Shown here in pieces: positions 2,113 to 22,797 of a stretch of 45,590 nucleotides of DNA. Position 1 is the first letter of the stretch, and each line of letters starts with the position of its first letter. The position numbers and the translations under genes were made by a program. This DNA comes from Macrostomum lignano (lineage: Eukaryota): positions 1 to 45,590 of the forward strand of contig NIVC01004449.1 of the NCBI GenBank assembly GCA_002269645.1. The letters are read 5' to 3'. Under the pieces are notes generated by a model, which was not told where the DNA came from, did not search any database, and saw only the letters and a program-made list of their open reading frames with translations.

Positions 2113-2169
2113 AAAAGATTTTTTTATCAAAACACCTTAAAAACACAAAACTGCTAAACATAATAGAAG

Positions 2170-3575
2170 CGGAATGTCAAACATAGAAGAGCCACCATGT
2201 CAAACATAAAAGAGCCACCATGCCAAACATAAAATAAGCACTATGTCAAACATATACGTGACTCCATGTCAACGATTAAAAAGCCACCATGTCAAACATA
2301 GAAGAGCCACTATGTCAAAACTAAACGAGCCACCACGTCTAACATTTAAGAGCCACCATGTCAAATATTTAAGAGCCACCATGTCAAACATATATGTGAC
2401 TTTATGTCAAACATTTAAGTGTCACCATATCAAACATCAAATAGCCACTTTGTCGAACATTAAAGAGCCACCGTGTCAAACATAAAAGAGCCACCATGTT
2501 AAACATAGAAGAGCCACCATGTCAAACATAAAATAGCCACCATGTCAGACATTAAAAAGCCACCGTATCAAACATAAAAGAGCCACCATGTAGAATATTA
2601 AAGAGCCACCATAAAGAACATTAAAGAGCCACCGTGTCAAACATTTGGGAGCCACCATGTCAGACATTAAAAAGCCACCATGTCGAACATAAAAGAGTTA
2701 CCATGTAGAACATTAAAGAGCCACCATTTCAAACAGTAAAGAGCCACCATGTCAAACATTTAGGAGCCACCATGTCAAACATTTAAGAGCCACCATCTCA
2801 AACATATATGTGACTTTATGTCAAACTTTCAAGAGCCACCATTTCGAACATTAAATAGCCACTTTGTCAAACATTAGAGAGCCGCCATGTCAAACATAAA
2901 AGAGTCACCAGGTTAAACATAAAAGAGCCACCAGGTTAAACATTAAAGAGCCACCATGTCAAACAATAAAGAGCCACCATGTCAAACATAAAAGAGCTAC
3001 CATGTTAAACATTTAAGAGCTACCATGTCAAACATTTAAGAGCTACCATGTCAAACATTAAAGAGCCACTATGTCAAAACATGATAGTGCCATCATGTCA
3101 AACCTAAAAGAGCCACCATGTCAAACATAAGGAGCCACCAGGTTAAACATTAAAGAGCCACCATGTCAAACAATAAAGAGCCACCATGTAAAACATAAAA
3201 GAGCCACCATGTCAGACAATAAAAGCCACCGTGTCAAACATAAAAGAGCCACCAGGTTAAACATTAAAGAGCCACCATGTCAAACAATAAAGAGCCACCA
3301 TGTTGAACATAAAAGAGCTACCATGTCAAACATTTAAGAGCTACCATGTCAAACATTTAAGAGCTACCATGTCAAACATTAAAGAGCCACTATGTCAAAA
3401 CATAATAGTGCCATCATGTCAAACCTAAAAGAGCCACCATGTCAAACATAAAAGAGCCACCATTTCGAACAGTAAAGAGCCACCATGTCAAGTATAAAAG
3501 AGCCACCATGTCAACATAAAAGAGCCACCATGTCAAACATTAAAGAGCCACCATGCCAAACATAAAAGATACACA
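2170..3575 (+). repeat. 23-bp satellite (AAAGAGCCACCATGTCAAACATT)n in element B
   Basis: Directly visible tandem array. Confidence 0.95.
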
Positions 3576-3654
3576 ATTTCAAACGTAATAGTAAGCGAAT
3601 TTTAAAGGAGCCACTATAATGCTAAGGAAATTGTCGCACTAGCTACTTATTGTC

Positions 3655-3857
3655 TGGTGGATGCTTGCTATTTGGGGGATGCTATCTATCTGGGGATGCT
3701 TGCTATCTGGGGGATGCTTGCTATCTGGGGGATGCTTGCTATCTGGGGGATGCTTGCTATCTGGGGGATGCTTGCTATCTGGGGGATGCTTGCTATCTGG
3801 GGGATGCTTGCTATCTGGGGGATGCTTGCTATCTGGGGGATGCTTGCTATCTGGGGG
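3655..3857 (+). repeat. 18-bp satellite (GGGGATGCTTGCTATCTG)n in element B
   Basis: About 11 near-identical units. Confidence 0.95.
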
Positions 3858-4570
3858 TTTTATAAACTAAATAAATAAAATAACTTTTATCAAACACGTT
3901 GACATATACAGGGCTCTAAACTAAAAAACTGTAAAAAGTTGATAGTTTTGTTTTACCTAAAATGCGTTATTAACGATCTCCAAAAATTCCTATTTTAAGC
4001 TTAAGCTTAAGAAAAACACTTAAAGTACTCCTGCTAAAAGGTATATTATATTAGACGAATATTAATTATTTCTGCTCCTCGAAGGGGGGCAAAACTTTAG
4101 CTAGTCCTATATACTAAAAATGAGTTGTCTGTGGGTAGGTAGGTAGGTATGCGATAGATTTCAGAAAAAATGGCTCAATCGATTTTCTTCAAACTTGCAC
4201 CATTCGATCAGAAATTTTCCTGGGACGGTACATGCATCTTGGCTAAGAAATTGCTCAATTTTAAAGGGATTAAATATTCGAAAAACATGCTTTTTTGCAA
4301 AGGTCAAGCAGCTCTTTCGACCTGAAATGCATTGTAAGAATGCTAGAGAAAAAACTGACTGACTGAATTCCAATTGTGATAAAGATTACATCACAACCAG
4401 TTGAAAACAGTGCCGAACAAATGCACACAAAACTTGATTTAAATTGTGTAACAATATTGCTAACTTAAATTGACACTGATACTGGCTGACTGATAAAATT
4501 GATTATGTCATAACTTTTTACTCTAACCGATTTGCTATAAAAATTAAATTATAAGGGCCACAATTCAAGA

Positions 4571-4641
4571 CAAGAGATAGCATAGATGCGAACAGACTGG
4601 ACTGCTAATGCTACGACCTGGGTTCGAATCTTAGTAGTGCA
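4571..4641 (+). pseudogene. tRNA-Ser(GCT)-like module inside Helitron C
   Basis: CTGGA-CTGCTAA anticodon arm and GGTTCGAATC B-box (4621-4630) at canonical tRNA spacing, followed by a T7 run. Confidence 0.6.
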
Positions 4642-4699
4642 AAAAGATTTTTTTATTCAAAAATCTTAAAAACACAAAATGCTAAACACAAAAAAGCAC

Positions 4700-7600
4700 A
4701 ATGTCAAACATTAAAGAGCCACCATGTCAAACATTAAAGAGCCACCATGTCGACCATTAAAGAGCCACCATGTCGACCATTAAAGAGCCACCATGTCGAA
4801 CATTAAAGAGCTACCATGTCGAACATTAAAGAGCCACCATGTCAACCATTAAAGAGCCACCATGTCGAACATTAAAGAGCCACCACGTCCAACATATACA
4901 TGACTCCATGTTGAACATTCAAGAGCTACCATGTCAAACATATACATGACGCCATGTCGAACATAAAAGAGCCACCATGTCGAACATTAAAAAGCCACCA
5001 TGTCAAACATTAAAGAGCCACCATTTCAACCCTAAAAGAGCCACCATGTCGAACATTAAAGAGCCACCATGTCAAACATTAAAGAGCAACCAGGTCAAAC
5101 ATATACATGACTCCATGTCGAACATTGAAGAGCCACCATGTCGAACATTAAAGGGCCACCATGTCAAATATTAAAGGGCCACCATGTCAAATATTAAAGA
5201 GCCACCATGTCAAACATTAAAGAGCCACCAGGTCAAACATGAAAGTGCCACCATGTCTAACATTAAAGAGCCACCATGGCAGACATATACATGACTCTAT
5301 GTCGAACATTCAAGAGCTACCATGTCAAACATATACATGACTCCATGTCAAACATTAAAGAGACACTATGTCAAACATTAAAGAGCCACCAGGTCAAACA
5401 TGAAAGTGCCACCATGTAACACATTAAAGAGCCACCATGTCGAACATTTAAGAACCACCATGTCAAACATAAAATAGCCACCATGTGAAACATATACGTG
5501 ACTTCATGTAAAACATTAAAGAGCTACCATATCAGACATATACATGACTCCATGTCAAACATATACTCGTACGTGACTCCATGTTAGACATTAAAGAGCC
5601 ACCATGTCGAACATTAAAGAGCCAACATGTTAAAAATACAAGAGCCACCATGTCAAACATATACATGACTCCATGTCAAACATTGAAGAGACACCATGTC
5701 GAACATAAAAGAGCCACCATGCAAAACATTAAAGAGACACTATGTCTAACATTAAAGAGCCACCATGTCGAACATTTAAGAGCCACCATGTCAAACATAT
5801 ACATGACTCCATGTTGAACATTCAAGAGCTACCATGTCAAACATATGCATGACTCCATGTTGAACATTCAAGAGCTACCATGTCAAACATATACATGACG
5901 CCATGTCGAACATAAAAGAGCCACCATGTAAAACATATACGTGACTCCATGTCAAACATTGAAGAGCCACCATGTCGAACATAAAAGGGCCACCATGTCA
6001 AATATTAAAGAGCCACCATGTCAAACATTAAAGAGCCACCAGGTCAAACATGAAAGTGCCACCATGTAAAACATTAAAGAGCCACCATGTCGAACATTTA
6101 AGAACCACCATGTCAAACATAAAATACCCAACATGTGAAACATATACGTGACTCCATGTAAAACATTAAAGAGCTACCATATCAGGCATATGCATGACTC
6201 CATGTCAAACATATACGTGACTCCATGTTAGACAATTAAGAGCCACCATTTCGAAAATTAAAGAGTCAACATGTTAAAAATACAAGAGCATCCATGTCAA
6301 ACATATACATGACGCCATGTCAAACATTGAAGAGACACCATGTCGAACATAAAAGAGCCACCATGCAAAACATAAAAGAGCCACCATGTCTAACATTAAA
6401 GAACCACCATGTCAAACATATACATGACTCCATGTCAAACAGTAAAGAGACACTATGTCAAACATTAAAGAGCCACCATGTCGAACATTTAAGAGCCACC
6501 ATGTCAAACATATACATGACTCCATGTTGAACATTCAAGAGCTACCATGTCAAACATATACATGACGCCATGTCGAACATTAAAGAGCCACCATGTCAAA
6601 CATTATAGAGCCACTATGTCGAACATTTAAGAGCCACCATGTCAAACATATACATGACTCCATGTTGAACATTAAAGAGCCACCATGTCGAACATTTAAG
6701 AGCTACCATGTGAAACATATACATGACTCCATGTCGAACATTACAGAGCCACCATGTCAAAGATAAAAGAGCCACCATGTCAAACATAAAAGAGCCAACA
6801 TGTCAAATATTAAAGAGCCACCAGGTCAAACATGAAAGTGCCACCATGTAAAACATTAAAGAGCCACCATGTCAAACATATACGTAACTCCATGTCAAAC
6901 ATTGAAGAGACCCCATGTCAAACATTAAAGAGCCACCATGTCGAACATAAAAGAGTCACCATGTAAAACATATACGTAACTCCATGTCGAACATTGAAGC
7001 GACACCATGTCGAACATAAAAGAGCCACCATGTCAAACATTAAAGAGCCACCATGTCAAACATATAAGTGACTTTATGTCGAACATTAAAGAGCCACCAT
7101 GTCTAACATTAAAGGCCACCATGTCCAACATTAAAGAGCCACCATGTCAAAAAGTAAAGAGCCCCCATGTCTAACATTTAAGAGCCATCATGTCAAACAT
7201 TAAAGAGCTACTTTGTCTAACATTAAAGAGCCACCATGTCAAACATTAAAGAGCCACCATGTCAAACATTAAAGAGCCACCATGTCAAACATAAAAGAGC
7301 CAACTTTTTGAACATTAAAGAGCCACCATGTCAAACATAATAGAGCCACCATGTCAAACATAATAGAGCCACCATGTCAAACATTAAAAAGCCACTTTGT
7401 CAAACATAGAAGAGCTCCCATGTCAAACATAGAAGAGCCCCCATGTCAAACATAGAAGAGCCACCATGTCAGACATTGAAAAGCCACCGTATCAAACATA
7501 AAAGAGTTACCATGTACGAGCGTAGAACAAAAAAGAGCCACAATGTATAACATAAAAGAGCCACAATGTATAACATAAAAGAGCCACCCTGTTAAACATA
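4700..7600 (+). repeat. 23-bp satellite in element C (~125 units, with higher-order sub-blocks)
   Basis: Same unit as in element B, with CATATACATGACTCC variants. Confidence 0.95.
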
Positions 7601-7689
7601 AAAGATACACAATTTCAAACGTAAAAGTAAGCGAATTTTAAAGGAGCCGCTATAATGCTAAGGAAATTGTCGCACTAGCTACTTATTGT

Positions 7690-8110
7690 CTGGTGGATGC
7701 TTGCTATCTTGGGGATGCTTGCTATCTGGGGGATGCTTGCTATCTGGGGGATGCTTGCTATCTGGGGGATGCTTGCTATCTGAGGGATGCTTGCTATCTG
7801 GGGGATGCTTGCTATCTGGGGGATGCTTGCTATCTGAGGGATGCTTGCTATCTGGGGGATGCTTGCTCTCTGGGGAATGCTTGCTATCCGGGGGATGCTT
7901 GCTATCTGGGGGATGCTTGAAATCTGGGGGATGCTTGCTATCTGAGGGATGCTTGCTATCTGGGGGATGCTTGCTATCTGGGGGACGCTTGCTATCTGGG
8001 GGATGCTTGCTATCTTGGGGATGCTTGCTATCTGGGGATGCTTGCTATCTTGGGGATGCTTGCTATCTGGGGGATGCTTGCTATCTGGGGGATGCTTGCG
8101 GTCTTGGGAT
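7690..8110 (+). repeat. 18-bp satellite in element C
   Basis: About 23 units. Confidence 0.95.
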
Positions 8111-8358
8111 GATTTCTTTTTGCAATGCACTTCATTTGAGCAGTTTGTCTGTTGTCTTTTTGAAGGATTTTTGGCTGTTTTTTTGTTACTTGTAGAGAAC
8201 AGAGATTCTATCCAGATGTCCCCCATCGGGGGGCGAAGATTGCTAGTAGAATCTGAGATCACATCTTCTTGCACTTTAATATTTTTGCTTCAAAATTCGG
8301 CTTTCCAAGCCACCGAACGGCTGAAACCTTCAGGCATCACTGTTTCATCAGCGACAGC

Positions 8359-8601
8359 ATGGACAAGTCAAACAACGACAATAAGTCCAACCAGTGCAAC
8401 CCCAACAATGAGCGCTATCAGGGCCACCAGCCCGGCTACCAGGGCACCGGCACCAAGGCGGATCTGGATAACCATGCCAACCAGCTGAACCCCAACAACT
8501 GGCGCTACCAGCAGGGCGGAGGCCCCAGTGGCGGTGGAGGCGGCAGCGGCAGCGGTGCCGCTGAGCAAGAGCAGCAGAAGTCTTGGTGCACCTTGCAGTG
8601 A
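8359..8601 (+). CDS. NQ[CL]NPNN double-repeat microprotein, paralog 1 (80 aa, ends in CaaX-like SWCTLQ)
   Basis: ATG at 8359 in frame with ORF 8269-8601; GC-rich codon usage like the other exons; 45-aa core shared with two other ORFs, with several synonymous differences. Confidence 0.8.
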   Translation: MDKSNNDNKSNQCNPNNERYQGHQPGYQGTGTKADLDNHANQLNPNNWRYQQGGGPSGGGGGSGSGAAEQEQQKSWCTLQ

Positions 8602-9354
8602 AGTCGGTGACAAAGACTGCCCCAGCCAGCATGCAGAAGATTGCCAAAAGATTAACAAAGACAGCAGTCTGTGTTGGTTTCACATTTGACTATTTAAAAT
8701 ACAAGATTAGCAAGTTGGATCTTAAAAATTTTTCTCATGTTCAAACTCGAAGGTCGCTTTGAAAATGCAGCATGAACTCGGCTTCTCCCTGCATGTCTTT
8801 TGTGTATTTTTGTTTGTCGAATTTTTTCAACTCAGTTTGGCCTAAGATGAAACTCATCCTAAGCACCCCAGTGCGCTCTTGTGCCTCTCCTGAGCAGGCA
8901 GCTGCAAGGTACCGTTAGACCGGCGCGGTGCGCGCTTAAACCAATGCGCTCCTATGATAGCGCGCGATTCGGAGTTGGCGTCCAATCCAAGTCGCGCGAG
9001 AATTTCTGTCAGAACTCCAAGGACTACTTAAAAGTATCGATTATTTTTCAGACAGTAGTCCCCGCCACGCCCTTGCCAGCGCAAGCGCTCTCAGTCCAGT
9101 CCTGATTCTAATCTCTGCAATAAACAGACTTGAAGTTCGGGTGGAGCCAGGGTAAAGTTGTTGCTCAAACTAAATGTACTTTTTGATTGAATTTCCTGGA
9201 AATGAGTTCTCAAGTTTCCAAGAAATTTCTGTCAGGCAGGCAGGTATTTCGAAAGCAAAAACACCGTGTTTTTCTTCTCTCACGTGCTCCGCACCTGGGG
9301 TGTACTTTTAAGCCAGAGTTTCTGACTCCTTCCACCGTCACGCACATTTCAGGC

Positions 9355-9401
9355 TATAAATAGTAAATACAAATCCCGAGGAGCCGCTCAGACCCGTGAG
9401 T
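9355..9401 (+). promoter_or_regulatory. Candidate TATA box (TATAAATAG 9355-9363), Inr-like TCAG (9388-9391) and 5' splice donor GTGAGT (9396) for microprotein paralog 2; putative UTR intron 9396-10026
   Basis: Motif spacing only; candidate acceptor CCCCAG at 10021-10026, 10 nt before the ATG. Confidence 0.4.
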
Positions 9402-9496
9402 TTCTTCATCGAGTTCCAAAGCTTCGAGAAGAATTTTTTGCTTTTCTAAGAATTCTCAGCTTTTGAAAAAAACGGTAAGTTTTTTTACAAGAACGG

Positions 9497-9928
9497 CACC
9501 ATTCTCTCTGTGTGGCGCCATTCTCTCTGTGTGGCGCCATTCTCTCTGTGTGGCGCCATTCTCTGTGTGGCGCCATTCTCTCTGTGTGGCGCCATTCTCT
9601 CTGTGTGGCGCCATTCTCTCTGTGTGGCGCCATTCTCTCTGTGTGGCGCCATTCTCTCTGTGTGGCGCCATTCTCTCTGTGTGGCGCCATTCTCTCTGTG
9701 TGGCGCCATTCTCTCTGTGTGGCGCCATTCTCTCTGTGTGGCGCCATTCTCTCTGTGTGGCGCCATTCTCTCTGTGTGGCGCCATTCTCTCTGTGTGGCG
9801 CCATTCTCTCTGTGTGGCGCCATTCTCTCTGTGTGGCGCCATTCTCTGTGTGGCGCCATTCTCTCTGTGTGGCGCCATTCTCTCTGTGTGGCGCCATTCT
9901 TCCTGTATGGCGCCATTCTCTCTGTGGC
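9497..9928. repeat. 19-bp minisatellite (GGCGCCATTCTCTCTGTGT)n
   Basis: About 22 near-identical units. Confidence 0.95.
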
Positions 9929-10036
9929 ACAATTTCAGTTCCCTACGAGTATAGCTCAGACTTGAGCTCTTACTAAAGCCATGGATTGACTTAGGACTGC
10001 ATCCGCACCTCACCGCGCACCCCCAGAGCAGCGGCC

Positions 10037-10246
10037 ATGGACAAATCCGGCAGGGACAACAAGTCCAACCAGTGCAACCCCAACAACTCCAGCTACCAGG
10101 GCCACCAGAGCGGCTATGGCGGCACCGGGACCAAGGCCGACCTGAGTAACCATGGCAACCAGCTGAACCCCAACAACTCGCGCTACCAGGGCGGAGGCGG
10201 CGGCCAGGGCCGGTCGGGGGACATTCGAAGAAATGAGCGGTTTTGA
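10037..10246 (+). CDS. NQ[CL]NPNN double-repeat microprotein, paralog 2 (69 aa)
   Basis: DNKSNQCNPNNSSYQGHQSGYGGTGTKADLSNHGNQLNPNNSRY core; GCGGCCATGG start context. Confidence 0.8.
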   Translation: MDKSGRDNKSNQCNPNNSSYQGHQSGYGGTGTKADLSNHGNQLNPNNSRYQGGGGGQGRSGDIRRNERF

Positions 10247-10526
10247 GAGGCGAAAGTCACGGAGCAGAGCTGACAGTTACAGAAATACTGATTGAGCTCT
10301 CGTAGAATAACCTGATGCCTCTGTGGCTGTTTACCATCAACTTTGTACTTTTGAGGACGCATGATTTGAGCAATAATTACAAAAAATATAATCACAAGAT
10401 TTTTTTGCGAATCAGCTACTTTTAGTAGTGCAATAATAACACAGCATTAAATTGAGCATCTTTTCAGTTTTTGTTAAAATTGAGTTCCACTGCGGACAAG
10501 CTTCAAGCCCTGCCACTGTGCCCCGG

Positions 10527-11964
10527 TGTCACGTCTTAAAAAAATTCTGCGTTGTTTTATTCAGCTGAATAAAAATACTTTTCAGTATCCAAACTCATTC
10601 GGTTATCTTGAATTCTCTCACTGAGCAGAAACTATCTTATGCTTATGCTTATCTTATCTTATCTTATCTTATCTTAAATATTCCGACAACATTGCAAGTA
10701 GACAATAAATTATTACTACAAGGTACATTTCAACAAAAAGACAACAACAATCCAGAACTGAATGATTTGTACTCGTACACAAAATTAAATAATGCACATT
10801 ATAATATTGTAAGACTTGATGTGAAAAATAAATTAACCGCAGATAGCTAGTCTAGCTTGTCCTTGAGATAAATCCGGCACGTTTTAAAGATACGCAAAGA
10901 AATGTTGAGCATATGTTGAATTATCAAACTTCTTTGTCGTTTAAGTCCTACTTTCTAGATCTTCCATTAATTTTACATTTGCTCTAAATCACAAAGTTTC
11001 TAGTGAGTCAAGTGAAACACCTTTTTCAGTCTCTAGTTCACACCAAGTACTTTAGATGACGCCAATTAGAAAATTTACTCTTAAAATATTAGAAATTCTT
11101 GAAATCACCTGCCTGGTGGCCATTGATCGCTGTACACTTCCCTCTCGAGTCCGTACAGGTTGTTGCTTAGGACGACACGTTCGACCGTGTATACCTTGGT
11201 ACACCACGGTGTCTTCAGTTCGCCGCGTTTCAGATCGTCACGGACAAAGTTCCGCAGCAGGACCTTGTCACCGACTCTAAGGCTGAGGCTGCTGGCAGAC
11301 GCGGACTTCTGAACGTACGAGCGTGCACAAATTTTGTCCTGCCGTCCCAGTGAAATCGCTCCTGCAGCTTCGATGGGGTGGACTTAATCCCCTGATGAGC
11401 TCCTCCAGTCGCAGAGGTGTGATCTTCTTAGATCAGTTGACAGATCTCTTTGATCTTCCACCTCCAGGCGACGCTCCGTTGACCGATGGCGCTTCTTCTG
11501 ACATCACAGAACAGCTGCTGGCCCTCGTACCTGAAGTTGCGCTCCGTTTGTCGAACCTTGCTGTTGAAGTTGTTCTTCTCCTTGGTTGTTGTCAAAGACG
11601 CAAGGATGTCGTTCGTATGCGCCACTAAGCAAGTAAAGTTTTAAATCCGAATACGCGGCAGACAAACTTTATTGTACATTAATTGTAAGTTTAATGTACA
11701 ATACGTACATATACTGTCTAGATTTAGATGTACCGAAAGTCAGAGAACTTTGAAATTTTGTTAACAGACTTGCGGACAAGAATGCGCGGCTATAAAAGAT
11801 TCGGCAGTATTCATTTAGGTGATATCAGATCACGGCTTAAACTGTGATTATTGACAGGTCTTTAATCTCGTAAACCCCAGAGAGAAATCAGCCTAGCGCT
11901 TGGCATGACTTCTGGCCCCAAATAAAATAACGCATCCAAAGTTAGGATAATGGTTGCCATGACA
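10527..11964 (-). mobile_element. Ginger1-like DNA transposon, internally deleted and decayed
   Basis: Termini TGTCA (10527) and TGACA (11964) flanked by a CCGG duplication (10523-10526, 11965-11968); subterminal inverted motif TGCGTTRTTTTATT; remnants of a Gypsy-type integrase N-terminus, H2C2 finger and GPY/F domain. TGT ends with a CCGG TSD are described for Ginger1. Confidence 0.75.
11105..11625 (-). pseudogene. Ginger/Gypsy-type integrase remnant: H2C2 zinc finger joined to the GPY/F domain, DDE core absent
   Basis: KEICQLI*EDHTSATGGAHQGIKSTPSKLQERFHWDG (in-frame stop at 11428-11430), frameshifted YVQK..VCQQ, then LRVGDKVLLRNFVRDDLKRGELKTPWCTKVYTVERVV (11105-11281). Confidence 0.78.
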
Positions 11965-12469
11965 CCGGTCCTCAGCCCTGTCACAATTTGCTCTTGCCTA
12001 AACTAAAGTAAATTTGCAACAAGCCGCTGTGGTAAACAGAAGGGTTGCCTATACCTCATGAATGCAGGTGCAGAGCAGACATTGTGCAATGCAGTAAACA
12101 AGGCTGCTCTTGCCAACTCAAATTCAATTGACCGGCTTAACCGAAATTGCACGGCACACACCCTCCTGGACTGCAGTAGTAAACAGGCAAGCTGTGTAAA
12201 CATTTCTAGGAAATAGGCAGATTTCCAAGAAATAAACCGAGAGTCTGGGTTCATCAGAGTACAAAAGCGCCAATGCTATTGCAGGTTGTTGTTCTCAGAT
12301 TCTATTTTTAGCAATGACTGAGAGGGCGTATTTAAGAGGCCAAGCCAGAGCGCCGCTTCCTCCCCGCTGTCACCGACTGCCGCCAGAGCTGAGCTAACGC
12401 GAGTCCTCAGAGTGATCAAACGCATTACACACAGACTAGTAAATCCAGCTACTAATCCAGATTAGCAAC

Positions 12470-12673
12470 ATGTCTGACAAAGCTGCCAGCGACAACAAGT
12501 CCAACCAGTGCAACCCCAACAATGAGCGCTACGCGGGCCACCAGCCCGGCTACCAGGGCACCGGCACCAAGGCGGACCTGGATAACCACGCCACCCAGCT
12601 GAACCCTAACAACGAGCGCTACCAGGCTCCTGGCGGACAGCAGGAGCCGCAGCAGCAGCCGCCACCAAAGTGA
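12470..12673 (+). CDS. NQ[CL]NPNN double-repeat microprotein, paralog 3 (67 aa)
   Basis: DNKSNQCNPNNERYAGHQPGYQGTGTKADLDNHATQLNPNNERY core followed by a Q/P-rich tail. Confidence 0.8.
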   Translation: MSDKAASDNKSNQCNPNNERYAGHQPGYQGTGTKADLDNHATQLNPNNERYQAPGGQQEPQQQPPPK

Positions 12674-13454: not shown

Positions 13455-13918
13455 GCAGCGCAGCTCCGTCAAAGGGCAGCGCAGCTCCGTCAAAGGGTAG
13501 CAGAGCTCCATCAAAGGTTAGCACAGCTCCATCAAAGGGTAGCAGAGCTCCATCAAAGGGTAGCAGAGCTCCATCAAAGGGTAGCAGAGCTCCATCAAAG
13601 GGTAGCACAGCTCCATCAAAGGGTAGCAGAGCTCCATCAAAGGGTAGCAGAGCTCCATCAAAGGGTAGCAGAGCTCCATCAAAGGTTAGCACAGCTCCAT
13701 CAAAGGGTAGCAGAGCTCCATCAAAGGGTAGCACAGCTCCATCAAAGGGTAGCAGAGCTCCATCAAAGGGTAGCACAGCTCCATCAAAGGGTAGCAGAGC
13801 TCCATCAAAGGGTAGCAGAGCTCCATCAAAGGGTAGCACAGCTCCATCAAAGGGTAGCAGAGCTCCATCAAAGGGTAGCACAGCTCCATCAAAGGGTAGC
13901 ACAGCTCCATCAAAGGGT
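13455..13918. repeat. 21-bp minisatellite (AGCTCCATCAAAGGGTAGCAG)n
   Basis: About 22 units. Confidence 0.95.
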
Positions 13919-14549
13919 CATGCTACTTACTATAAGTAGTACAGCTAGCAAAATAAACGGAACGCCAACACAGCTGCCTGCGCAGTTGAGTTATCGATGT
14001 ATTAGAAACACAATTAGCGTAACAGTAATTGTAATAATAAGGTAATAATTGTTATGCTGTGTATTCGGTGGGCTGCTGAATTTGCAGAACAGATGATGCG
14101 GATTGTTGGGGGGCTCAGGCAAAGCATTTCAACACCTATTTCGGCAGACAGACACTGGGGGGGGGGAGGCTGGAGAAAGTGGGAAACTGCAGCAAGTGGG
14201 AGCCGCCGCGCACAAGAAATTCACAACAACACGAGAACGAAGAGAAGTAGCGGCTTGGGGAAACGCACAGGTGGCCACAATAAATGGATATAAAATACGC
14301 GGGGCTCCGAGCCGCCAATTGAATTGCATTCGCTGCTACCGGGGGAGGGGGACGCGGTGCCGCCTGAACGCGCAAGATTTAAAGTTAATAGCAATACAAT
14401 AGCATCCCGACAGTCATTGTGACAGTGCAGGGACAGAATAAATAAACTGGGTTCACGGAGAGGACTAAAGACACGAGGGGACAACAGAGGCCTGGCAAAT
14501 GCACCGCTGCGAACACTGGAGGGGGGGTTCCGCATCACGAAGCAGCCGC

Positions 14550-17500
14550 TCAGTCCTCCATGGCGTCCTGAACCTCGTGCGGGTTGAGGATGCCGGGCAC
14601 GGTGCACTGCTGGGCCAGCTTGGCCTCCTGGGCCCGCCGGATCTCCTCCTGCTGCTCCTCCAGGTACAGGTCGCTCAGGTCCTCGCCGGTGAACTCGCGA
14701 ATCTGCACCAGGAAGTCGCGCAGGTGCTCGCGGAATCGCTTCTGGTCGGCGTTGAACGAGAAGCAGCCCTGGACGAACACGGCGATCTGCGGCCGCTGCA
14801 GGTGCGGGTAGGCCTCCGACAGCAGCGCGCTGAGCGACTGCAGCACGAACTCGCTGTTGCTCACGCTGGCCTGCAGCTGCGTGTGCAGCCGGTCCCGCTC
14901 GCACAGGGAAAACATCAGGCACAGCACCGAGCTCACCTGCGAACCGGGGGGGGGGGCTTGATGGCTGGGATCTGCTGGGATTGCTGGGATCTCCTGCGAT
15001 TGAGACTCCGATTTCAAGGGATCGTCAGGGATTGTAGCTTGGATTTCCAGGGATTGTGGCTGGGATCTCCGGGGAGTGTGGCTGGGATCTCCGGGGAGTG
15101 TGGCTGGGATCTCCTGGGATTGTGATTGGGATTTCCGGGGATTGTGGCTGGGATCTCCAAGAATCTCCGGGGATTGTGGCTGGGATCTCCGGGGAATGTG
15201 GCTGGGATCTCCGGGGAGTGTGGATGGGATCCTCGGGGATTGTGGCTGAGATCTCCTGGGATCTCCGAGGATTGTGGCTGGGATCTCCTGGGATCTCCGA
15301 GGATTGTGGCTGAGATCTCCTGGGATCTCTGAGGATTGTGGCTGGGATCTCGTGGGAGTGGCTGGGCTCTCCGGGGATTTTCTGGTATTGTCGGAGTGGC
15401 CGGGATCTGGCGAGTTTCTGGGAGTGGCTGGCATCTCATGAACACCAGAAGTGAAAACCCTGCGGCAGCTCACCTGAGACAGCTGGCCGGCCTGCAGCGG
15501 GTCGGTGAGCACGGAGAACAGGTGCTGCAGCAGACTCATGAAGAAGTTGGCGTGGAACTGGCCGGCAGCGGCCGGGTCCAGGCAGTCGACCTTCTGCAGC
15601 AGGCGGAGCACGATGCTGAGGCCGGTCTCGCTGACGGACCTCAAGCTGTGCCGCACGGCCCACAGCACGCTCTCCAGCACGATGCGCAGGCGGTCGGTGG
15701 GCAGGCGGATGAGGGTGGTGAAGCAGCTCTGAGTGACGGCCTCCAGAAGGGTGAACAGGTTCAGCCGGTGCTCCGGGAACTCGTGCTGGTCCTGGCTGAG
15801 CATCTCCAGGGTGCATTCGAACACGGCGTCCAGCATCGGGGGCACGTGCTGGCTGGCCTGCTCGCCCAGCTTGCTGACTATGGTGGCCAGCAGGGCCAGC
15901 ACCTCCGGCTCCCTGCGGAGTGTCATGGGGATAATCATGAATTGATGCGCTTTATTGGCTTTCTAATTTTCTATTGACTATGGCGTCATCTGAGGACAGC
16001 GGGGTCGCGTGAGGACAGATAAAGACAGCGGGATTCCTAGAAGACAGATGAAAGCGGGGTCATATCAGGACAGATAAGGACAGCGGGATTCCTAGAAGAC
16101 AGATGAAAGCGGGGTCATATCAGGACAGACAAGGACAGCAGGATTCCTAGAAGACATGAAAGCGGGGTCATATCAGGACAGATAAGGACAGCGGGATCCC
16201 TAGAAGACATGAAAGCGGGGTCATATCGGACAGATGAGGACACCCGGGGTCACTTGAGCACAGTGAGATCCCTAGAGAACAGTGGGGCCACCAAATGGAG
16301 TCCAGCAGCGCCATACCTGGCAGAGGCGACATTCCGCTGATAGTCGAGAAGCACGGCCTCGCACAGGGGCGGCACGAACTTGTCGGACACCAGGGCCGGG
16401 TCAGTGCTGCGGCCGACCCAGCAGTCGAGCAGTCGCAGCGTCTCCTTCTTGACGCCGCGCATCGCCCGGATCAGCGGCTGCTTGGCCACCAGTTCGCCGT
16501 GCGCGACCACCGCCTTGCTGATGTCCTCGCTGAGCAGTTTGTACAGGCTGAGCATGTCCATGAAGTTGCGGCCGAGCTGGCGCACGTAGGGGTGGCCGAG
16601 GCTGCGGCAGGCGCTGACGTTGGTGCGCAGCAGGACGGAGAGCTGGCGCACCGTGTCCGGCTCCTGAAGGCTTTCCACGTTCTGTGCAGCCATCTGGATG
16701 ATGCCGTCCCAGACCTGCGGCAAAGGGGGAGGTGAAACTTTAAAATTAGATTTCCAGAATGAAGAACCGGTTGCTATGGTAACATAATTAGATTTCCAGA
16801 ATGAAGAACCGGTTGCTATGGTAACAGAATTCGATTTTCAGAATAAGAAAACCGTTTCTAGGGCGAATGCTTCCAGGAAAAAAAGCGGTTGCTATGACAT
16901 CTAAGATTCCAGTGAAACAGCGGCATGGCTGAACAGTCGCACCTGGTTAGGCAGGCAGAACAGCTGCTCAATCATGATGTCCTGCTGCTGCCTGTCCGGC
17001 TGAGCCCCGATCATCATGCCCAGGGCCTCGTAGAATGTGTGCACCTGGGCCGGCTGCAGGTCGCAGATGATGGAGCTCAGGTTGCACAGAATCTCTTCAA
17101 CAAAGGGAGTCACCTCGCCGGCCTGCAGCTGCACGAACTGGCGCCGGCACTTGTTGGCGATCTTGATGAACGTGTCACAGGCCATGTCCTGGCGGGGTGG
17201 GGAGGGATTAGCTGTGGGATATAATCTATCACTGGGATTAGCTGTGGGATATAATCTATCACTGGGATTAGCTGTGGGATATAATCTATCACTGGGATTA
17301 GCTGTGGGATATAATCTATCACTGGGATTAGCTGTGGGATATAATCTATCACTGGGATTAGCTGTGGGATATAATCTACCACTGGGATTAGCTGTGGGAT
17401 ATAATCTACCACTGGGATTAGCTGTGGGATATAATCTACCACTGGGATTAGCTGTGGGATATAATCTACCACTGGGATTAGCTGTGGGATATTTTTGGGG

Positions 17501-20282
17501 ATTACCAGTGGGATAATCTTGTACTGGGACTAACAGATGAAAAATCTTGCACTGGAAAGCATTCTAACCCTAACCCTAACGATGAAGAGTCTCACCTGAA
17601 CCCCCTCGTGGGTCTCGTGCATGAACTCGAACAGCTTGTTCACGACAGTCTTGAGGAAGCGCCAGTGCGCTCGCAGGAAGCGGGGATACTGCCCGACCAC
17701 GTACATGATGTTGGCAGCCACAATTGCTTTGTTGTCCTTGCCCTGCAACAGTTTTTAAGCATATTTGTTGTAGTTTAAAATCCAGGAAAAATGCCCCGAC
17801 CGCCCAGATACATGATAGACACACTGGACTGCCATGGGTGCACCACAGCAGAACCCCAGCCCCAAGGCCTCTAATTTTAACCCAGTCTGCAGAGGGGCTC
17901 AGGGCGCTGCCTCAGGGCGCTGCCTGCCTGCCTACCTCTGTCTTGGGGTCCGGGCCTCATGGGATCGAACCGCCTGAGCCCCAAACGGGCTCAGCTGCCG
18001 CCGCCCCAAGGCCTCACCTGCTTGTGCTCGCACAGACCCAGCAGCTCCCGGATGACCACCACGATGAAGCGCCGCTCGTCGTCCTCGTTCATGGCACCTG
18101 AGATGGAGCCCACGGCCCAGCACAGGGTGCTGAGGTTCTTCCAGGACCACTCGGACCCGTCAACCTGGCGGAGCAGCTTCTCGGTGATGACGCGCTCAGT
18201 CTCCACCGGGTCCAGGTGAGTCAGGTACACCAGGGTCTCCCGCATGCTCTTGTACAGCGCCACGCTGTCCGTGTCCTTCATGAACTCGCGCACCACCTCG
18301 CCCTGCTCGTTCTCCACCACCAGCACCTCCTCGGGCTTGGCCATGCGGCTGATCATGATGCGGCGGAGGCTGGACAGCACCGGCCAGTACACCCGCCGCC
18401 TGTCCGGCCGGCCGACCTCGGGCAGGACGCTGACGAACGGGTTCTCCCGGTACAGCTCGGTGCACAGCGAGTTCCAGTACTCCAGACAGATCTTAAAGAT
18501 CTCAACCTCGTCAACCTCAGAGATCAGCACCAGGTAGGTCAGCGCGTCTGAGAAGTGGCCCTGAGGGTAATAAATGTTTTATTTGCATGAGGTTCACTTC
18601 ACATACACTCCTGCCTACTATGAGAAGGATGACTGCAGTGAAAATATAATTGCTTTAAATGAACTAGATTAAGCTGCCCTAATTAAAACCCTAATCCTAA
18701 CCCTGATCTGACGGTCCTGGCGCCTAGGGAACATGATCTCTGAGTCATTGATGCCCAGGGAACATGATCTGTGAGTCCCTGGTGCCTAGGGAAAATGATC
18801 TGTGAGTCCCTGATGCCTAGGGAACATGATCTGTGGGTCCCTGGTGCCTAGGGAACATGATCTGTGGGTCCCTGGTGCCTAGGGAACATGATCTGTGGGT
18901 CCCTGGTGCCTAGGGAACATGATCTCTGGGTCCCTGGTGCCTAGGGAACATGATCTGTGAGTCCTGGTGCCTAGGGAACATGATCTGTGAGTCCCTGATG
19001 CCTAGGGAACATGAAGCCATTGCGGGTCCCAGATGCCTAGGGAACATGAAGCCATTGCGGGTCTCAGATGCCTATGGAACATGAAGCCATTGCGGGTCTC
19101 AGATGCCTATGGAACATGAAGCCATTGCGGGTCTCAGATGCCTAGGGAACATGAAGCCATTGCGGGTCTCAGATGCCTAGGGAACATGAAGCCATTGCGG
19201 GTCCCAGATGCCTAGGGAACATGAAGCCATTGCAGGTCCCCGCCAACCTGCAGAGCGGAACTGGTCTCCACCAGAGAGGCGTGCTCCCTCAGGAAGGTGC
19301 AGTAGAAGAGGCTGAGGTTCTGGATGAAGTTCTGCTCGTCATCCCGGCCGCGCTGGTAGGCTTCCCGGATGTTGGTGCTGATGGGCAGCATCTCCTTGAG
19401 CCTCTCGGTGGTGAGGCAGAACAGCTGCACGAACTGGTCATTGTACTCGCTGGTCTGGACTCCCGCGATCTCGGTGAGGCACTTGAGCGTCACGTTGCGG
19501 AACATGGGCACGTTGAGGAACTTGTGCACCAGGGTGGCGATGAGCTTGGTCTGGAACAGGTAGCCCAGCGGGATCCAGTGCGTGAACTTCAGCAGAGTCT
19601 CCAGTGTGGCCGCCACCAGGGGCGCGTTCTGCGAATTGTCCAGCACGTGCTGGCACAGCTGGAAGATCAGGGAGAACTCGGCGCACATGTTGTCCTTGAG
19701 GTGGCGAGCCTTCACCTGGGTGAGCTGGCCAGAGTTGAATTCGAATACTTCCTCGCTGAGCAGCTTGAGGATGACCATGTTGTTCTGGCACAGCGACTCG
19801 TTCGACTTGCTGCTGCCGACGATGTCGCTGATGAAGCTGGGCCAGTTCTTCGGCCACTCGTGCTTGAGAATCTGCACCAGGATCATGTTGAGCTTGCCCA
19901 GGTACACCTTCTCGCTCTCCAGCATTTGCGGATTGGAGGAAGTCTTAATCACCAAGCCGACAATGTAGCGCTTGATGCCCTCGCACTGCTCCCTGGGCAG
20001 AACCTTCCAGCGGGTCTTGATGAGGTTCTCCAGAATCTGCAGCGCGTAATACTTGCTCTGCTGGTTGCCGCTGTACTCCAGAATTGAGTCCACCCGGGTC
20101 CAGGCGTCTGGGTGCTCCTTGAGGGTGGTGAGCACCTGCTGCGCCATCTGCTGCTGGCTGCCGGTGCTGCTGTACATGAGGGTGACAACGGAGTCCAGCA
20201 GGCCGATGTCCAGCTTGTGATTGAAGTCCAGCAGTTTGGCCACTTTTTCTTCGGAAATTGCATCCATGACTACTGGCGGCAT
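14550..20282 (-). CDS. XPO1: Exportin-1 (CRM1), 7 coding exons: 19248-20282, 18018-18560, 17596-17742, 16943-17188, 16317-16714, 15474-15912, 14550-14936; 3195 nt = 1064 aa + stop
   Basis: Recognisable CRM1 sequence throughout ([107 protein letters not shown]). All six introns are GT-AG and keep frame. The total length matches ~1070-aa CRM1 proteins. Confidence 0.97.
14965..15420. repeat. Degenerate ~22-25-bp minisatellite (GGGATTGTGGCTGGGATCTCC...) in XPO1 intron 6
   Basis: Directly visible. Confidence 0.85.
16000..16245. repeat. ~53-55-bp tandem repeat (~4 copies) in XPO1 intron 5
   Basis: CAGCGGGATTCCTAGAAGACA...AAAGCGGGGTCATATCAGGACAGA recurs. Confidence 0.85.
17204..17495. repeat. 30-bp minisatellite (GGGATTAGCTGTGGGATATAATCTAYCACT)n in XPO1 intron 3
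   Basis: About 9.5 units. Confidence 0.95.
18720..19235. repeat. Two-phase minisatellite in XPO1 intron 1: ~31-bp units (to ~19010), then 35-bp units, sharing the core TGCCTAGGGAACATGA
   Basis: Directly visible. Confidence 0.9.
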
Positions 20283-20849
20283 TTGCAGGTGTGCGCATTC
20301 ACAGCAGTGTCAGATTATTCCTGTATTATAGATTAGCAACCATGGCAGTGCCAGAGCAAGTTTAGCATTTCTATGACTAAGTTATGTATGCAGAATTTTT
20401 TGGACTATATATATGTATATAGATATGGTTATTACAGGAATGCATATTTCCTAGTAATATTGGAGCCAATGCACCATTGGAGCCCTTAATTTAATAGGTG
20501 GGAGGAGACAGAATAGGAGAAATGAATGAATGCTGCCACTGTCATAGCTTTTGTGAGAGAGTTCTTAAGTCTCTAGGGTTGGAGACTAAGCAAAAAAATT
20601 ACTCCATGTGCACATTGTATAGATGGGATAAGGCGAAAATTAGGGAAATAATATTTTCACTTACAATGCAAAGGGTCCTAAGTAAGTTCTTAAGTCCCCA
20701 GGACCAAGGAATTATAAGAAGCAGTTTTTCAGACTATATGCACATTGTATGGTTGGGATAGTGGGGGCTAAAGTTAAGACTAATGCAATCCTAGCCATTA
20801 TTTTTATATAATAAATAAGACCTAATGAGGCTAAACTATTGTTGTCACT

Positions 20850-21154: not shown

Positions 21155-21459
21155 TATATATTTTATCATTATTATCATTATCATTCACAGATAGACAACT
21201 CATTTTTAGTTTAGTTAGCTATGAATATTAATATACCTAATAGATAGGCTATAGAAAACTTAAATGACTATGAATATAGATATAGAAAGACTTTTTATAG
21301 TAAAACTACTAGCAATCTTCGCCCCCCGATGGGGGGCATCTAGATAGAATCTCTGGCTCTCTACAAGTATCAAAAAGACGGCCCACTAAAGCCTTCACAT
21401 AGACAATAGAAAAACTGCTCAAATGAAGGGCAATGCAAAAAGAAATCATCCCAGGACAG

Positions 21460-22740
21460 CAAGCAACCCCCCAGATAGCAAGCACCCCCAGATAGCAAGC
21501 ATCTCCAGATAGCAAGCACCCCCAGATAGCAGGCACCCCAGATAGCAAGCATCCACCTAATAGCAAGCACCCCAAGATAGCAAGCATCCCCAGATAGCAA
21601 GCACCCCCAGATAGCAAGCACCCCCAGATAGCAAGCACTCCAAGATAGCACGCACCCCAGATAGCAAGCATCCACCTAATAGCAAGCACCCTTAGAAAGC
21701 AAGCACCCCCAGATAGCAAGCATCCATCTAATAGCAAGCACCCTTAGATAGCAAGCATCACAAGATATCAAGCACCCCCAGATAGCAAGCATCTCCAGAT
21801 AGCAAGCATCCACCTAATAGCAAGCACCCCAAGATAGCAAGCATCCAGCTAATAGCAAGCACCCTTAGATAGCAAGCACCCTTAGATAGCAAGCACCCCC
21901 AGATAGTGAGCACCCCCAGATAGCACGCATCTCCAGATAGCAAGCACTCCAAGATAGTAGGCACCCCATTTATGTTTGACATGGTAGCTGTTTTGTGTTT
22001 GACATGGTGGCTCTTTAATGTTTGACCTGGTGGCACCTTAATGTCTGTAATGATGGCTCTTTAATGTTCGACATGGTGGCTCTTTTATGTTTTACATGGT
22101 GGCTTTTTAATGTTTGACCTGGTGGCACTTTAATGTCTATAATGATGGCTCTTTAATGTTCGACATGGTGGCTCTTTTATGTTCAACATGGTGGCTCTTT
22201 AATGTTTGACATGGTGGCTCTTTTATGTTTTACATGGTGGCTTTTTAATGTTTGACCTGGTGGCACTTTAATGTTTGCAATGATGGCTCTTTAATGTCTG
22301 ACATGGAGTCACTTATACGCTTGACATGGTGGCTCTTTAATGTTTGACATGGTGGCACTTTAATGTCTGAAATGGAGTCATATATACGCTTGACATGGTG
22401 ACTCGTTGATGTTTGACATAGTGGCTCTTTAATGTTCAACATGGGGGCTCTTTAATGTTTGACATGGTGGCTCTTTAATGTTCAACATAGTGGCTCTTTA
22501 CTGTTCGACATGGTGGCTCTTTAATGTTGGACATGGTGGCTCTTTAATGTTCGACATGGTGGCTCTTTAATGTTCGACATGGTGGCTCTTTAATGTTTGA
22601 CATGGTGGCTCTTTAATGTTTGACATGGTGGCTCTTCAATGTTTGACATGGTGGCTCTTTAATATTAGACATGGAGTCACATATATGTTTGACATGGTGG
22701 CCTTTAATGTTTGAAATGGTGCCACTTTTGTTTGAAATTG
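21460..22740 (-). repeat. 18-bp (21460-21968) and 23-bp (21968-22740) satellites in element D
   Basis: Reverse complements of the arrays in elements B and C. Confidence 0.93.
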
Positions 22741-22797
22741 TGCTTCTTTTATGTTTAGCATTTTGTTTTTAAGATGTTTTAATAAAAAAATTATTTT

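What the first reader, a model, noticed from the sequence alone, without database searches (positions are those of the whole stretch)
8359..12673. Cluster of three paralogous N/Q/G/Y-rich microproteins with a doubled DN[KH]xNQ[CL]NPNNxRY motif
Seen: three same-strand ORFs (80, 69, 67 aa) about 2 kb apart share a 45-aa core: repeat 1 DNKSNQCNPNNxxY, spacer xGHQxGYxGTGTKADL, repeat 2 xNHxxQLNPNNxRY (30-aa period), then unrelated low-complexity tails. Paralogs 1 and 3 differ in the core at 5 synonymous versus 3 replacement codons, consistent with purifying selection. No signal peptide is present. I cannot assign a known function; I recall NQLNPNN-like motifs only from uncharacterised proteins (unverified). 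Inference: a small intracellular protein family, possibly prion-like, self-assembling or a short interaction module. This is the best candidate here for an undescribed gene family.
Basis: partly seen in the sequence, partly recalled or inferred. Interest (0 to 1): 0.7.

Follow-up and report, generated by a model that had tools for sequence, protein, structure and literature searches.

The report
Unnamed pan-domain microprotein family, three flatworm copies
Three neighbouring small genes of the flatworm Macrostomum lignano are real, selected genes. They belong to a large unnamed family of tiny water-loving proteins, built on one highly conserved 25-30-residue motif, that occurs in animals, protists, bacteria and archaea, and no member I could find has a tested function.

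Summary
Three same-strand ORFs (8359-8601, 10037-10246, 12470-12673; 80, 69 and 67 aa) share a 44-aa core holding the motif DN[KH]xNQ[CL]NPNN twice, 30 aa apart. DNA similarity between the copies stops at the edges of the coding core. dN/dS is 0.23-0.54 and GC3 is 0.80-0.84.

The window is a Macrostomum lignano contig (NIVC01004449.1). All three ORFs are annotated genes in a transcript-based annotation.

Profile searches show the genes are not orphans. There are 497 clusters at 50% identity and about 2,575 at 90% identity. Members come from molluscs, annelids, rotifers, nematodes, insects, mites, springtails and protists. At least 118 confirmed loci lie in bacteria and archaea. Every source name I saw but one (a stray "Serine kinase") is hypothetical or uncharacterized. 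Pfam, NCBIfam and PDB gave no valid match, and motif strings found no paper.

The unit is Y-x-G-T-G-T-K-A-D-L-D-N-H-x-N-Q-[LCM]-N-P-N-N-x-x-Y. AlphaFold predicts an 11-residue capped helix per repeat.

My best guess at function, held with low confidence, is a cytosolic hydrophilin-like protein whose conserved polar helix face binds a widespread target. The prion-like reading is not supported. This is a real, undescribed family.

The parts
8359..8601 (+). Paralog 1 coding sequence, 80 aa from the first ATG. The core is aa 7-50 (nt 8377-8508) and the motifs lie at 8377-8409 and 8467-8499. It has a G/S/Q-rich tail.
   Evidence: ORF list; alignment; the deposited gene product spans 8302-8601 and is open at its 5' end; GC3 0.80.
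10037..10246 (+). Paralog 2 coding sequence, 69 aa. The core is nt 10055-10186 and the motifs lie at 10055-10087 and 10145-10177. It has a G-rich basic tail.
   Evidence: annotated as a 69-aa gene product; GC3 0.84.
12470..12673 (+). Paralog 3 coding sequence, 67 aa. The core is nt 12491-12622 and the motifs lie at 12491-12523 and 12581-12613. The tail QAPGGQQEPQQQPPPK looks like the canonical ...QAPKK ending with an insertion.
   Evidence: an identical product is annotated on two contigs; AlphaFold model.
8347..8511 (+). Reference copy of the only DNA stretch shared by the three genes. The other copies are 10025-10189 and 12461-12625. It runs from about 10 nt before the ATG to the end of the protein core.
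   Evidence: the repeat finder family D6, 79-86% identity; blastn of the three gene units finds nothing outside the core.

Best explanation
Shown: the three ORFs are tandemly duplicated, transcript-annotated, protein-coding genes of Macrostomum lignano under purifying selection. They belong to a large unnamed family of 35-180-aa hydrophilic proteins found in animals, protists, bacteria and archaea. The family is built from 1 to 6 copies of a roughly 30-aa unit, Y-x-G-T-G-T-K-A-D-L-D-N-H-[AS]-N-Q-[LCM]-N-P-N-[NH]-x-x-Y.

Predicted: each unit forms one 11-residue alpha-helix (K-A-D-L-D-N-H-x-N-Q-L). It has a T/S/D N-cap and an Asn-Pro C-cap, and Gly/Tyr-rich flexible linkers join the units.

Inferred, with low confidence (about 0.3 for the mechanism): the proteins act in the cytosol as hydrophilin-like small proteins that are largely disordered on their own. 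The capped helix presents an invariant polar face (D-7, N-4, H/R/K-3, Q0) next to a narrow hydrophobic stripe (L-6, A-2, L/C/M+1). That helix docks onto a ligand or macromolecule common to very different cells. Copy number, through tandem genes and repeat number, sets the dose. The likely role is protection or regulation under water, salt or dormancy stress.
For: Coding and selection:
- The motif occurs only in these ORFs, with 5 pattern matches against 0 expected.
- DNA similarity is confined to the coding core.
- NG86 dN/dS is 0.23, 0.31 and 0.54.
- GC3 is 0.80-0.84 against flanks of 0.35-0.57.
- All three are gene products in the deposited annotation, which was built from RNA-seq and transcript-end data (PMC5730564).

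Family size and spread:
- 17 hits with one paralog, down to E = 3e-20 for the best hit outside the window.
- 497 clusters at 50% identity with E <= 1e-3, of which 144 have E <= 1e-10.
- 2,575 clusters at 90% identity with E <= 1e-3, and 1,568 with an arthropod profile.
- Named sources include Pinctada, Haliotis, Elysia, Solemya, Lamellibrachia, Rotaria, Romanomermis, Gryllus, ants, bees, termites, Culicoides, Dinothrombium, Allacma, Euglena and MMETSP transcriptomes.
- At least 118 confirmed prokaryotic loci, including a 35-aa single-repeat protein on a 1.76-Mb Nitrosopumilaceae contig.

Structure: the repeat logo has N-4, Q0, N+2 and P+3 at 98-100%, and T/D/S at the N-cap position. The AlphaFold best model has pLDDT 79.9, with helices at residues 4-14 and 34-44, which are exactly the K..L segments.

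Hydrophilin criteria: GRAVY is -1.69 to -1.83 and Gly is 9-20%.

Dosage and modularity: another eukaryotic contig also carries three same-strand tandem paralogs, one with six exact 30-aa repeats. The motif is fused to PLAC8 and tetraspanin proteins.
Against: - There are no expression-under-stress, localisation or binding data for any member.
- Near-invariance of specific polar residues across three domains is stronger than expected for a pure bulk 'molecular shield'. It points to a specific target that remains unidentified.
- The AlphaFold global fold is uncertain: pTM is 0.44 and the other four models score pLDDT 54-70. Order versus disorder is therefore unresolved.
- There is no conserved gene neighbour in prokaryotes to suggest a pathway.
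- Tails are acidic in most bacteria and basic or neutral in animals, so a single charge-based mechanism is unlikely.
- I could not see the RNA-seq coverage itself. The transcript evidence is indirect and rests on the annotation method.
Confidence: 0.45

Rival explanations
1. The motif is a specific adaptor or regulator module. The capped helix is a short, autonomous binding element for one defined and very widely conserved macromolecule, such as a component of translation, proteostasis or membrane traffic. The microproteins would be stoichiometric regulators rather than bulk protectants.
For: Fixed polar residues are extremely conserved, with N-4, Q0, N+2 and P+3 at about 100% over 430 unique repeats from all domains. 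The motif occurs as a terminal appendage on PLAC8 and tetraspanin membrane proteins. An archaeal single-repeat protein is nearly identical to the animal repeat unit.
Against: No partner is known. Prokaryotic loci share no conserved neighbour. Distribution looks sporadic rather than universal, which is odd for a regulator of a core machine. Repeat number varies from 1 to 6.
Confidence: 0.25
2. The protein is a metal- or ion-binding microprotein. The Asp, Asn, His and Cys residues of the motif would chelate a divalent cation for buffering or chaperoning. This fits the fusion to PLAC8 proteins, a family linked to Cd, Zn and Ca handling according to my own knowledge.
For: Conserved D, D, N, H, N, Q and N side chains. 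Cys follows Q in 81 of 136 first repeats. PLAC8 fusions exist.
Against: The His position is R in 14% and K in 4% of repeats, including K in all three flatworm first repeats. The Cys position is L or M in most last repeats and in most prokaryotes. The residues lie on a predicted helix, not a loop. The pattern i/i+4 D...[HRK] looks like a helix-stabilising salt bridge.
Confidence: 0.1
3. The protein is a prion-like, self-assembling Q/N-rich protein.
For: N+Q makes up 25-29% of residues and Gly-rich tails are present.
Against: Only 17-23 N+Q per protein, below 30 per 80 residues. The N and Q residues are positionally invariant inside a charged, Pro-punctuated motif, not a compositional tract. 16-20% of residues are charged. 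Homologs in bacteria carry strongly acidic tails.
Confidence: 0.04
4. The ORFs are not genes. They would be chance ORFs or decayed repeats in a satellite-rich region.
For: The window is full of minisatellites that create long spurious ORFs in all frames.
Against: The ORFs lie outside the arrays. Cross-phylum protein hits reach E = 1e-20 to 1e-44. Substitutions favour synonymous sites. GC3 bias is present. The ORFs are annotated as transcripts.
Confidence: 0.01

Closest known systems
Group 1 LEA / Em-type proteins (Pfam LEA_5), including bacterial GsiB-like relatives
   Same: From my own knowledge, these are small, very hydrophilic, Gly-rich proteins made of a variable number of tandem copies of a conserved roughly 20-aa motif. 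They occur in eukaryotes, bacteria and archaea and are linked to water-deficit tolerance. This family shows the same architecture logic: 1-6 repeats, GRAVY about -1.7, and presence in three domains.
   Different: There is no sequence relationship: no Pfam hit even at E <= 10. The motif here is Asn/Gln/Pro-based with a predicted capped helix. No stress induction has been shown.
Hydrophilins (operational class: Gly > 6%, hydrophilicity index > 1)
   Same: All three paralogs meet both numerical criteria.
   Different: The class is defined by composition plus induction under water deficit. Induction is untested here. Positional conservation in this family is much stricter than in most hydrophilins.
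Bacterial KGG-repeat and CsbD-like general-stress microproteins
   Same: From my own knowledge, these are stand-alone, small, hydrophilic, repeat-containing cytosolic proteins with poorly understood biochemical roles. They are often present in several copies per genome.
   Different: They have different motifs, and no Pfam or NCBIfam hit was found. Those families are not known from animals.
Pfam PF22698, semialdehyde dehydrogenase dimerisation domain
   Same: 11 of 19 family members give a local match. The best is E = 9.3e-6 at 26.0 bits, over profile positions 24-58.
   Different: The match is below the gathering score of 27. It covers about 30 of 165 profile positions. The three window proteins give no hit. 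It is a local motif resemblance, not the domain.

Membership tests
Unnamed DNHxNQxNPNN microprotein family (defined here) | At least one copy of [DN]-N-[HRK]-x-[ND]-Q-x-N-P-N-[NH] followed by Y/F at +8 | tested here: met
   Each paralog has two copies. The logo comes from 430 unique repeats.
Unnamed DNHxNQxNPNN microprotein family (defined here) | Significant profile-HMM similarity to members from other phyla | tested here: met
   Paralog 3 hits proteins from other species at E = 3e-20 to 4.6e-9. It scores 4.3e-22 against the 94-sequence profile, although it is itself a row of that profile.
Unnamed DNHxNQxNPNN microprotein family (defined here) | 30-aa repeat period and small size, with no signal peptide or membrane helix | tested here: met
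   The period is 30 aa. Lengths are 67-80 aa. Maximum 15-residue hydropathy is -0.27. No dedicated signal-peptide predictor was available.
Hydrophilins | Gly content > 6% and mean hydrophilicity > 1 (GRAVY < -1) | tested here: met
   Gly is 17.5, 20.3 and 9.0%. GRAVY is -1.69, -1.76 and -1.83.
Hydrophilins | Accumulation under water deficit and protection of enzymes on drying | not testable with these tools
   No expression or biochemical data were available.
LEA_5, KGG, CsbD and other curated small stress-protein families | Match to the family's Pfam or NCBIfam model | tested here: not met
   The three paralogs hit no family at E <= 10. Seven prokaryotic relatives gave no relevant family.
Prion-like Q/N-rich domains | At least 30 Q+N in an 80-residue window (the classic criterion, from my own knowledge), in a compositional and not positionally conserved tract | tested here: not met
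   23 of 80, 17 of 69 and 19 of 67. The N and Q residues are positionally invariant. PLAAC was not available.
PF22698 semialdehyde dehydrogenase dimerisation domain | Score at or above the gathering threshold over most of the 165-position model | tested here: not met
   The best relative scores 26.0 bits against a cut-off of 27, over 33 positions. The window proteins give no hit.
Secreted peptide or neuropeptide precursors | N-terminal hydrophobic signal sequence | tested here: not met
   The N-termini MDKSNND, MDKSGRD and MSDKAAS are polar, and no window has positive hydropathy.

The most novel reading that the evidence does not exclude
The capped DNHxNQxNPNN helix is an ancient, autonomous recognition module for a target shared by bacteria, archaea and eukaryotes. 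These microproteins would then be a previously unrecognised pan-domain class of regulators or protectants, possibly spread in part by horizontal transfer. That would account for the archaeal 35-aa protein being almost identical to the animal repeat unit.
Probability: 0.2. Interest if true: 0.85.

Novelty: new variant of a known kind. Interest (0 to 1): 0.62.

Why it matters
Highly conserved protein motifs shared by all three domains of life are rarely left without a family model, structure, name or paper that I could find. This one has thousands of database members labelled only hypothetical. It is short enough to study by peptide chemistry, and it is present in tractable organisms: M. lignano with RNAi and transgenesis, and bacterial genera that include laboratory strains. 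Defining its target would add a new entry to the small set of universal microprotein or hydrophilin modules. It would also annotate thousands of orphan genes at once. For the flatworm genome specifically, it shows that these three tiny ORFs should be kept as real genes.

Tried and rejected
- Pfam and NCBIfam scans of the three paralogs, 19 relatives and 7 prokaryotic relatives gave nothing valid. The only recurrent hit, PF22698, is sub-threshold and local.
- A PDB sequence-profile search returned only a chance antibody match at E = 0.66. Foldseek of the AlphaFold model against the PDB returned 0 matches.
- Three full-text searches for motif strings found nothing relevant.
- I looked for conserved neighbours in 80 prokaryotic loci by all-against-all clustering of flanking ORFs. 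No family is shared across unrelated taxa.
- tblastn of a bacterial-type member against the plasmid and phage collections found no match, possibly because of low-complexity masking. The IMG/VR scan found only 6 loci, so the family is not a notable mobile-element cargo.
- I recalled that some databases call such proteins 'alpha-amylase'. I could not confirm this. Every name retrieved was hypothetical or uncharacterized, apart from one stray UniRef 'Serine kinase' and one 'YukE' label.
- I checked the Acinetobacter desiccation hydrophilins DtpA and DtpB in the literature as a lead. The review I read (PMC13552118) shows no sequences, so I claim no link.
- The two M. lignano contigs are 98.3% identical, which is too close to add dN/dS information.
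- A 480-aa protein that appeared in one 90% cluster is unrelated and is a clustering artefact.
Full report
**1. What is in the sequence.** Three + strand ORFs lie at 8359-8601, 10037-10246 and 12470-12673 and encode 80, 69 and 67 aa. Their alignment has 41 invariant columns. The shared 44-aa core reads DNKSNQCNPNN-xxY-xGHQxGYxGTGTKADL-xNHxxQLNPNN-xRY, and the two motifs are exactly 30 residues apart. The C-terminal tails are unrelated and rich in G, S or Q. A six-frame scan finds the motif nowhere else in the 45.6-kb window. The back-translated pattern occurs 5 times against 0.00 expected in shuffles.

**2. Are they genes?** Four lines of evidence say yes.
- DNA similarity among the three units is limited to about 140-166 nt, from the start codon to the end of the protein core. 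Upstream, downstream and tail sequences no longer align.
- Nei-Gojobori dN/dS over the core is 0.23 (paralogs 1 and 3), 0.31 (1 and 2) and 0.54 (2 and 3).
- GC3 is 0.80-0.84, while flanking DNA is 0.35-0.57 GC.
- The window is contig NIVC01004449.1 of assembly GCA_002269645.1, the Macrostomum lignano Mlig_3_7 assembly (PMC5730564).

All three ORFs are gene products in the deposited annotation. That annotation was built from RNA-seq, spliced-leader and poly(A)-end data. The first product is annotated from 8302 and is open at its 5' end. This suggests a transcript start near there and ATG 8359 as the true start, which fits the conserved M-D/S-K N-termini.

A second contig, NIVC01003302.1, carries the same three genes. 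It is 98.3% identical over 11.4 kb, as expected for this partly duplicated genome. I did not see read coverage myself, so the evidence for expression is indirect.

**3. Relatives.** A search with paralog 3 alone returns 60-110-aa proteins at E = 3e-20 to 4.6e-9. They include hypothetical proteins of the pearl oyster Pinctada and the cricket Gryllus.
- A profile of these against 1.84 billion representative proteins finds 497 clusters at E <= 1e-3, of which 144 have E <= 1e-10.
- A 94-sequence profile finds 2,575 clusters at 90% identity.
- An arthropod-type profile finds 1,568.

Named members come from gastropods, bivalves, an annelid tubeworm, bdelloid rotifers, a nematode, crickets, ants, bees, a sawfly, a termite, a mirid bug, a biting midge, a mite and a springtail. 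Others come from Euglena and MMETSP protist transcriptomes. The transcriptome-derived members show that homologs are expressed elsewhere.

Translating them shows 27-70-aa proteins with one or two motifs in many lineages:
- Nitrosopumilaceae, Methanoregula and Flavobacteriia; some Flavobacterium and Chryseobacterium proteins carry an N-terminal membrane helix plus two or three repeats
- Pseudomonas, Acinetobacter, Vibrio and Burkholderia
- Chloroflexota, Treponema, Izemoplasmatales and others

A 35-aa protein encoded on a 1.76-Mb Nitrosopumilaceae contig, MGKYSGTGDKADLDNHSNQLNPNNEEYAGDGEDDE, is almost the animal repeat unit.

**4. Is it described?** I found no description.
- Pfam (models up to 2025) and NCBIfam give no valid hit for the flatworm proteins, their relatives or the prokaryotic forms.
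- The only recurrent signal is a sub-threshold local match to PF22698: 26.0 bits against a cut-off of 27, over about 30 of 165 positions. I treat it as a motif coincidence.
- There is no PDB relative by sequence or by fold.
- RefSeq, UniRef and IMG names for ten prokaryotic clusters are 'hypothetical protein', with one stray 'Serine kinase' and one 'YukE' label.
- All animal names are 'uncharacterized'.
- Three full-text searches for motif strings found nothing relevant.

**5. Anatomy of the module.** A position table from 430 unique repeats gives Y(-15) x G T G T(-10) K A D L D N(-4) H [AS] N Q(0) [LCM] N P N [NH] x x Y(+8) x G. N-4, Q0, N+2 and P+3 are 98-100% conserved. The His position is R in 14% and K in 4% of repeats. 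The flatworm first repeats have K and lack the YxGTGT lead-in, so they are N-terminally truncated units. In two-repeat proteins the residue after Q is mostly C in the first repeat (81 of 136) and L or M in the last.

AlphaFold with the 94-sequence alignment predicts helices at residues 4-14 and 34-44 of paralog 3, and coil elsewhere. Mean pLDDT is 79.9, with 84-91 across the core. However, pTM is 0.44 and the other four models score 54-70.

Helix 34-44 is exactly K-A-D-L-D-N-H-A-T-Q-L. The preceding T/S/D position is a typical N-cap, and Asn-Pro is a typical C-cap plus C' pair. That reading rests on established helix-capping rules, from my own knowledge.

On a helical wheel, my inference is as follows:
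- L-6, A-2 and L+1 form a narrow hydrophobic stripe.
- D-7, N-4, H-3 and Q0 form the invariant polar face.
- D-7 and [HRK]-3 are spaced i/i+4, like a salt bridge.

**6. Other clues.**
- Composition meets the numerical hydrophilin criteria, with GRAVY -1.69 to -1.83 and Gly 9-20%.
- There is no hydrophobic segment.
- A contig from another, unidentified eukaryote also carries three same-strand tandem paralogs within 4.4 kb. One of them has six exact 30-aa repeats. Tandem amplification and repeat-number change therefore recur.
- In some, probably protist, proteins the motif is fused to PLAC8 domains (two proteins) or to a tetraspanin-like protein. This shows it can work as a module attached to membrane proteins.
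- Prokaryotic loci share no conserved neighbour.
- Viral contigs rarely carry the motif.

**7. Interpretation.** It is established that these are real genes of a very widespread family for which I found no description. I put that at 0.95 or higher. What the proteins do is unknown.

My preferred reading, at about 0.3, is a cytosolic hydrophilin-like protein that is mostly disordered alone. Its capped helices would dock through the invariant Asn/Gln face onto a target common to very different cells, with dosage set by gene and repeat copy number.

The main rival, at about 0.25, is a specific adaptor or regulator of one conserved macromolecule. The extreme positional conservation favours some specific contact in either case.

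Metal binding, at about 0.1, is weakened by H-to-R/K and C-to-L/M substitutions and by the helical context.

The prion-like reading, at about 0.04, fails on the Q/N count (17-23 per protein) and on the fixed positions of those residues.

Closest analogues in logic, but not in sequence, are group 1 LEA / GsiB-type repeat hydrophilins. By my own knowledge, these also span three domains with a variable number of a conserved hydrophilic motif.

**8. Verdict.** I rate it as a new family within the known kind of small hydrophilic repeat proteins, with moderately high interest. It is a highly conserved pan-domain motif with no annotation that I could find, and it is readily testable.

Noticed in passing
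window 2156-7627, 3653-3857, 7689-8099 and 21458-22756: A composite satellite appears on both sides of the gene cluster. It consists of a 23-nt unit (about 62 plus 122 copies) followed by the 18-nt unit TCTGGGGGATGCTTGCTA. It reappears in inverted orientation at 21458-21967 (a 17-nt unit that is nearly the reverse complement of the 18-nt unit) and 21972-22756 (the 23-nt unit reversed). The inverted arrays bracket about 13.4 kb holding the three microprotein genes and the exportin gene.
   Followed up: partly
window 7689-8099 and 9495-9926: Minisatellite arrays of about 23 copies (18-nt and 19-nt units) end about 260 bp and about 110 bp upstream of the start codons of paralogs 1 and 2. A third array (21-nt unit, 13462-13918) lies about 790 bp downstream of paralog 3. 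They generate long spurious ORFs in several frames.
   Followed up: no
window about 14200-20300, - strand: A multi-exon CRM1/exportin-1 gene (IBN_N, Xpo1, CRM1 repeats, CRM1_C) is convergent with the microprotein cluster. Its apparent introns contain further tandem repeats with units of 30-98 nt.
   Followed up: partly
window 43085-44023 and 34453-35910: These long ORFs, which give many weak coiled-coil-type Pfam hits or none, coincide with 21-nt and 29-nt tandem arrays (43122-43790 and 34634-35603). They are probably repeat artefacts, not genes.
   Followed up: partly
window 23000-26000 and 33000-36000: Composition swings sharply. There is an AT-rich block (GC 0.27) at about 23-26 kb and a GC-rich block (0.61) with strong negative GC skew (-0.41) at about 34-36 kb. 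An ORF at 35593-36486 (- strand) has a spectrin-repeat hit.
   Followed up: no
L001 (NIVC01003302.1): A second contig of the same assembly is 98.3% identical over 11.4 kb. It carries the same three genes and the exportin gene, which fits the known duplicated (neopolyploid) state of this genome.
   Followed up: partly
L006 (Nitrosopumilaceae MAG contig CBDHDZ010000013.1, gene starting at about 2992): This archaeal 35-aa single-repeat protein is nearly identical to the animal repeat unit, including the YSGTGDKADL lead-in that most bacterial versions lack. This suggests either extreme constraint or horizontal transfer between marine archaea and invertebrates or protists.
   Followed up: no
relatives P0005, P0024, P0167 and others: The precomputed Pfam label PF22698 (semialdehyde dehydrogenase dimerisation domain) on several family members comes from a 30-residue local match just under the gathering score. 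It could seed wrong annotations in databases.
   Followed up: yes
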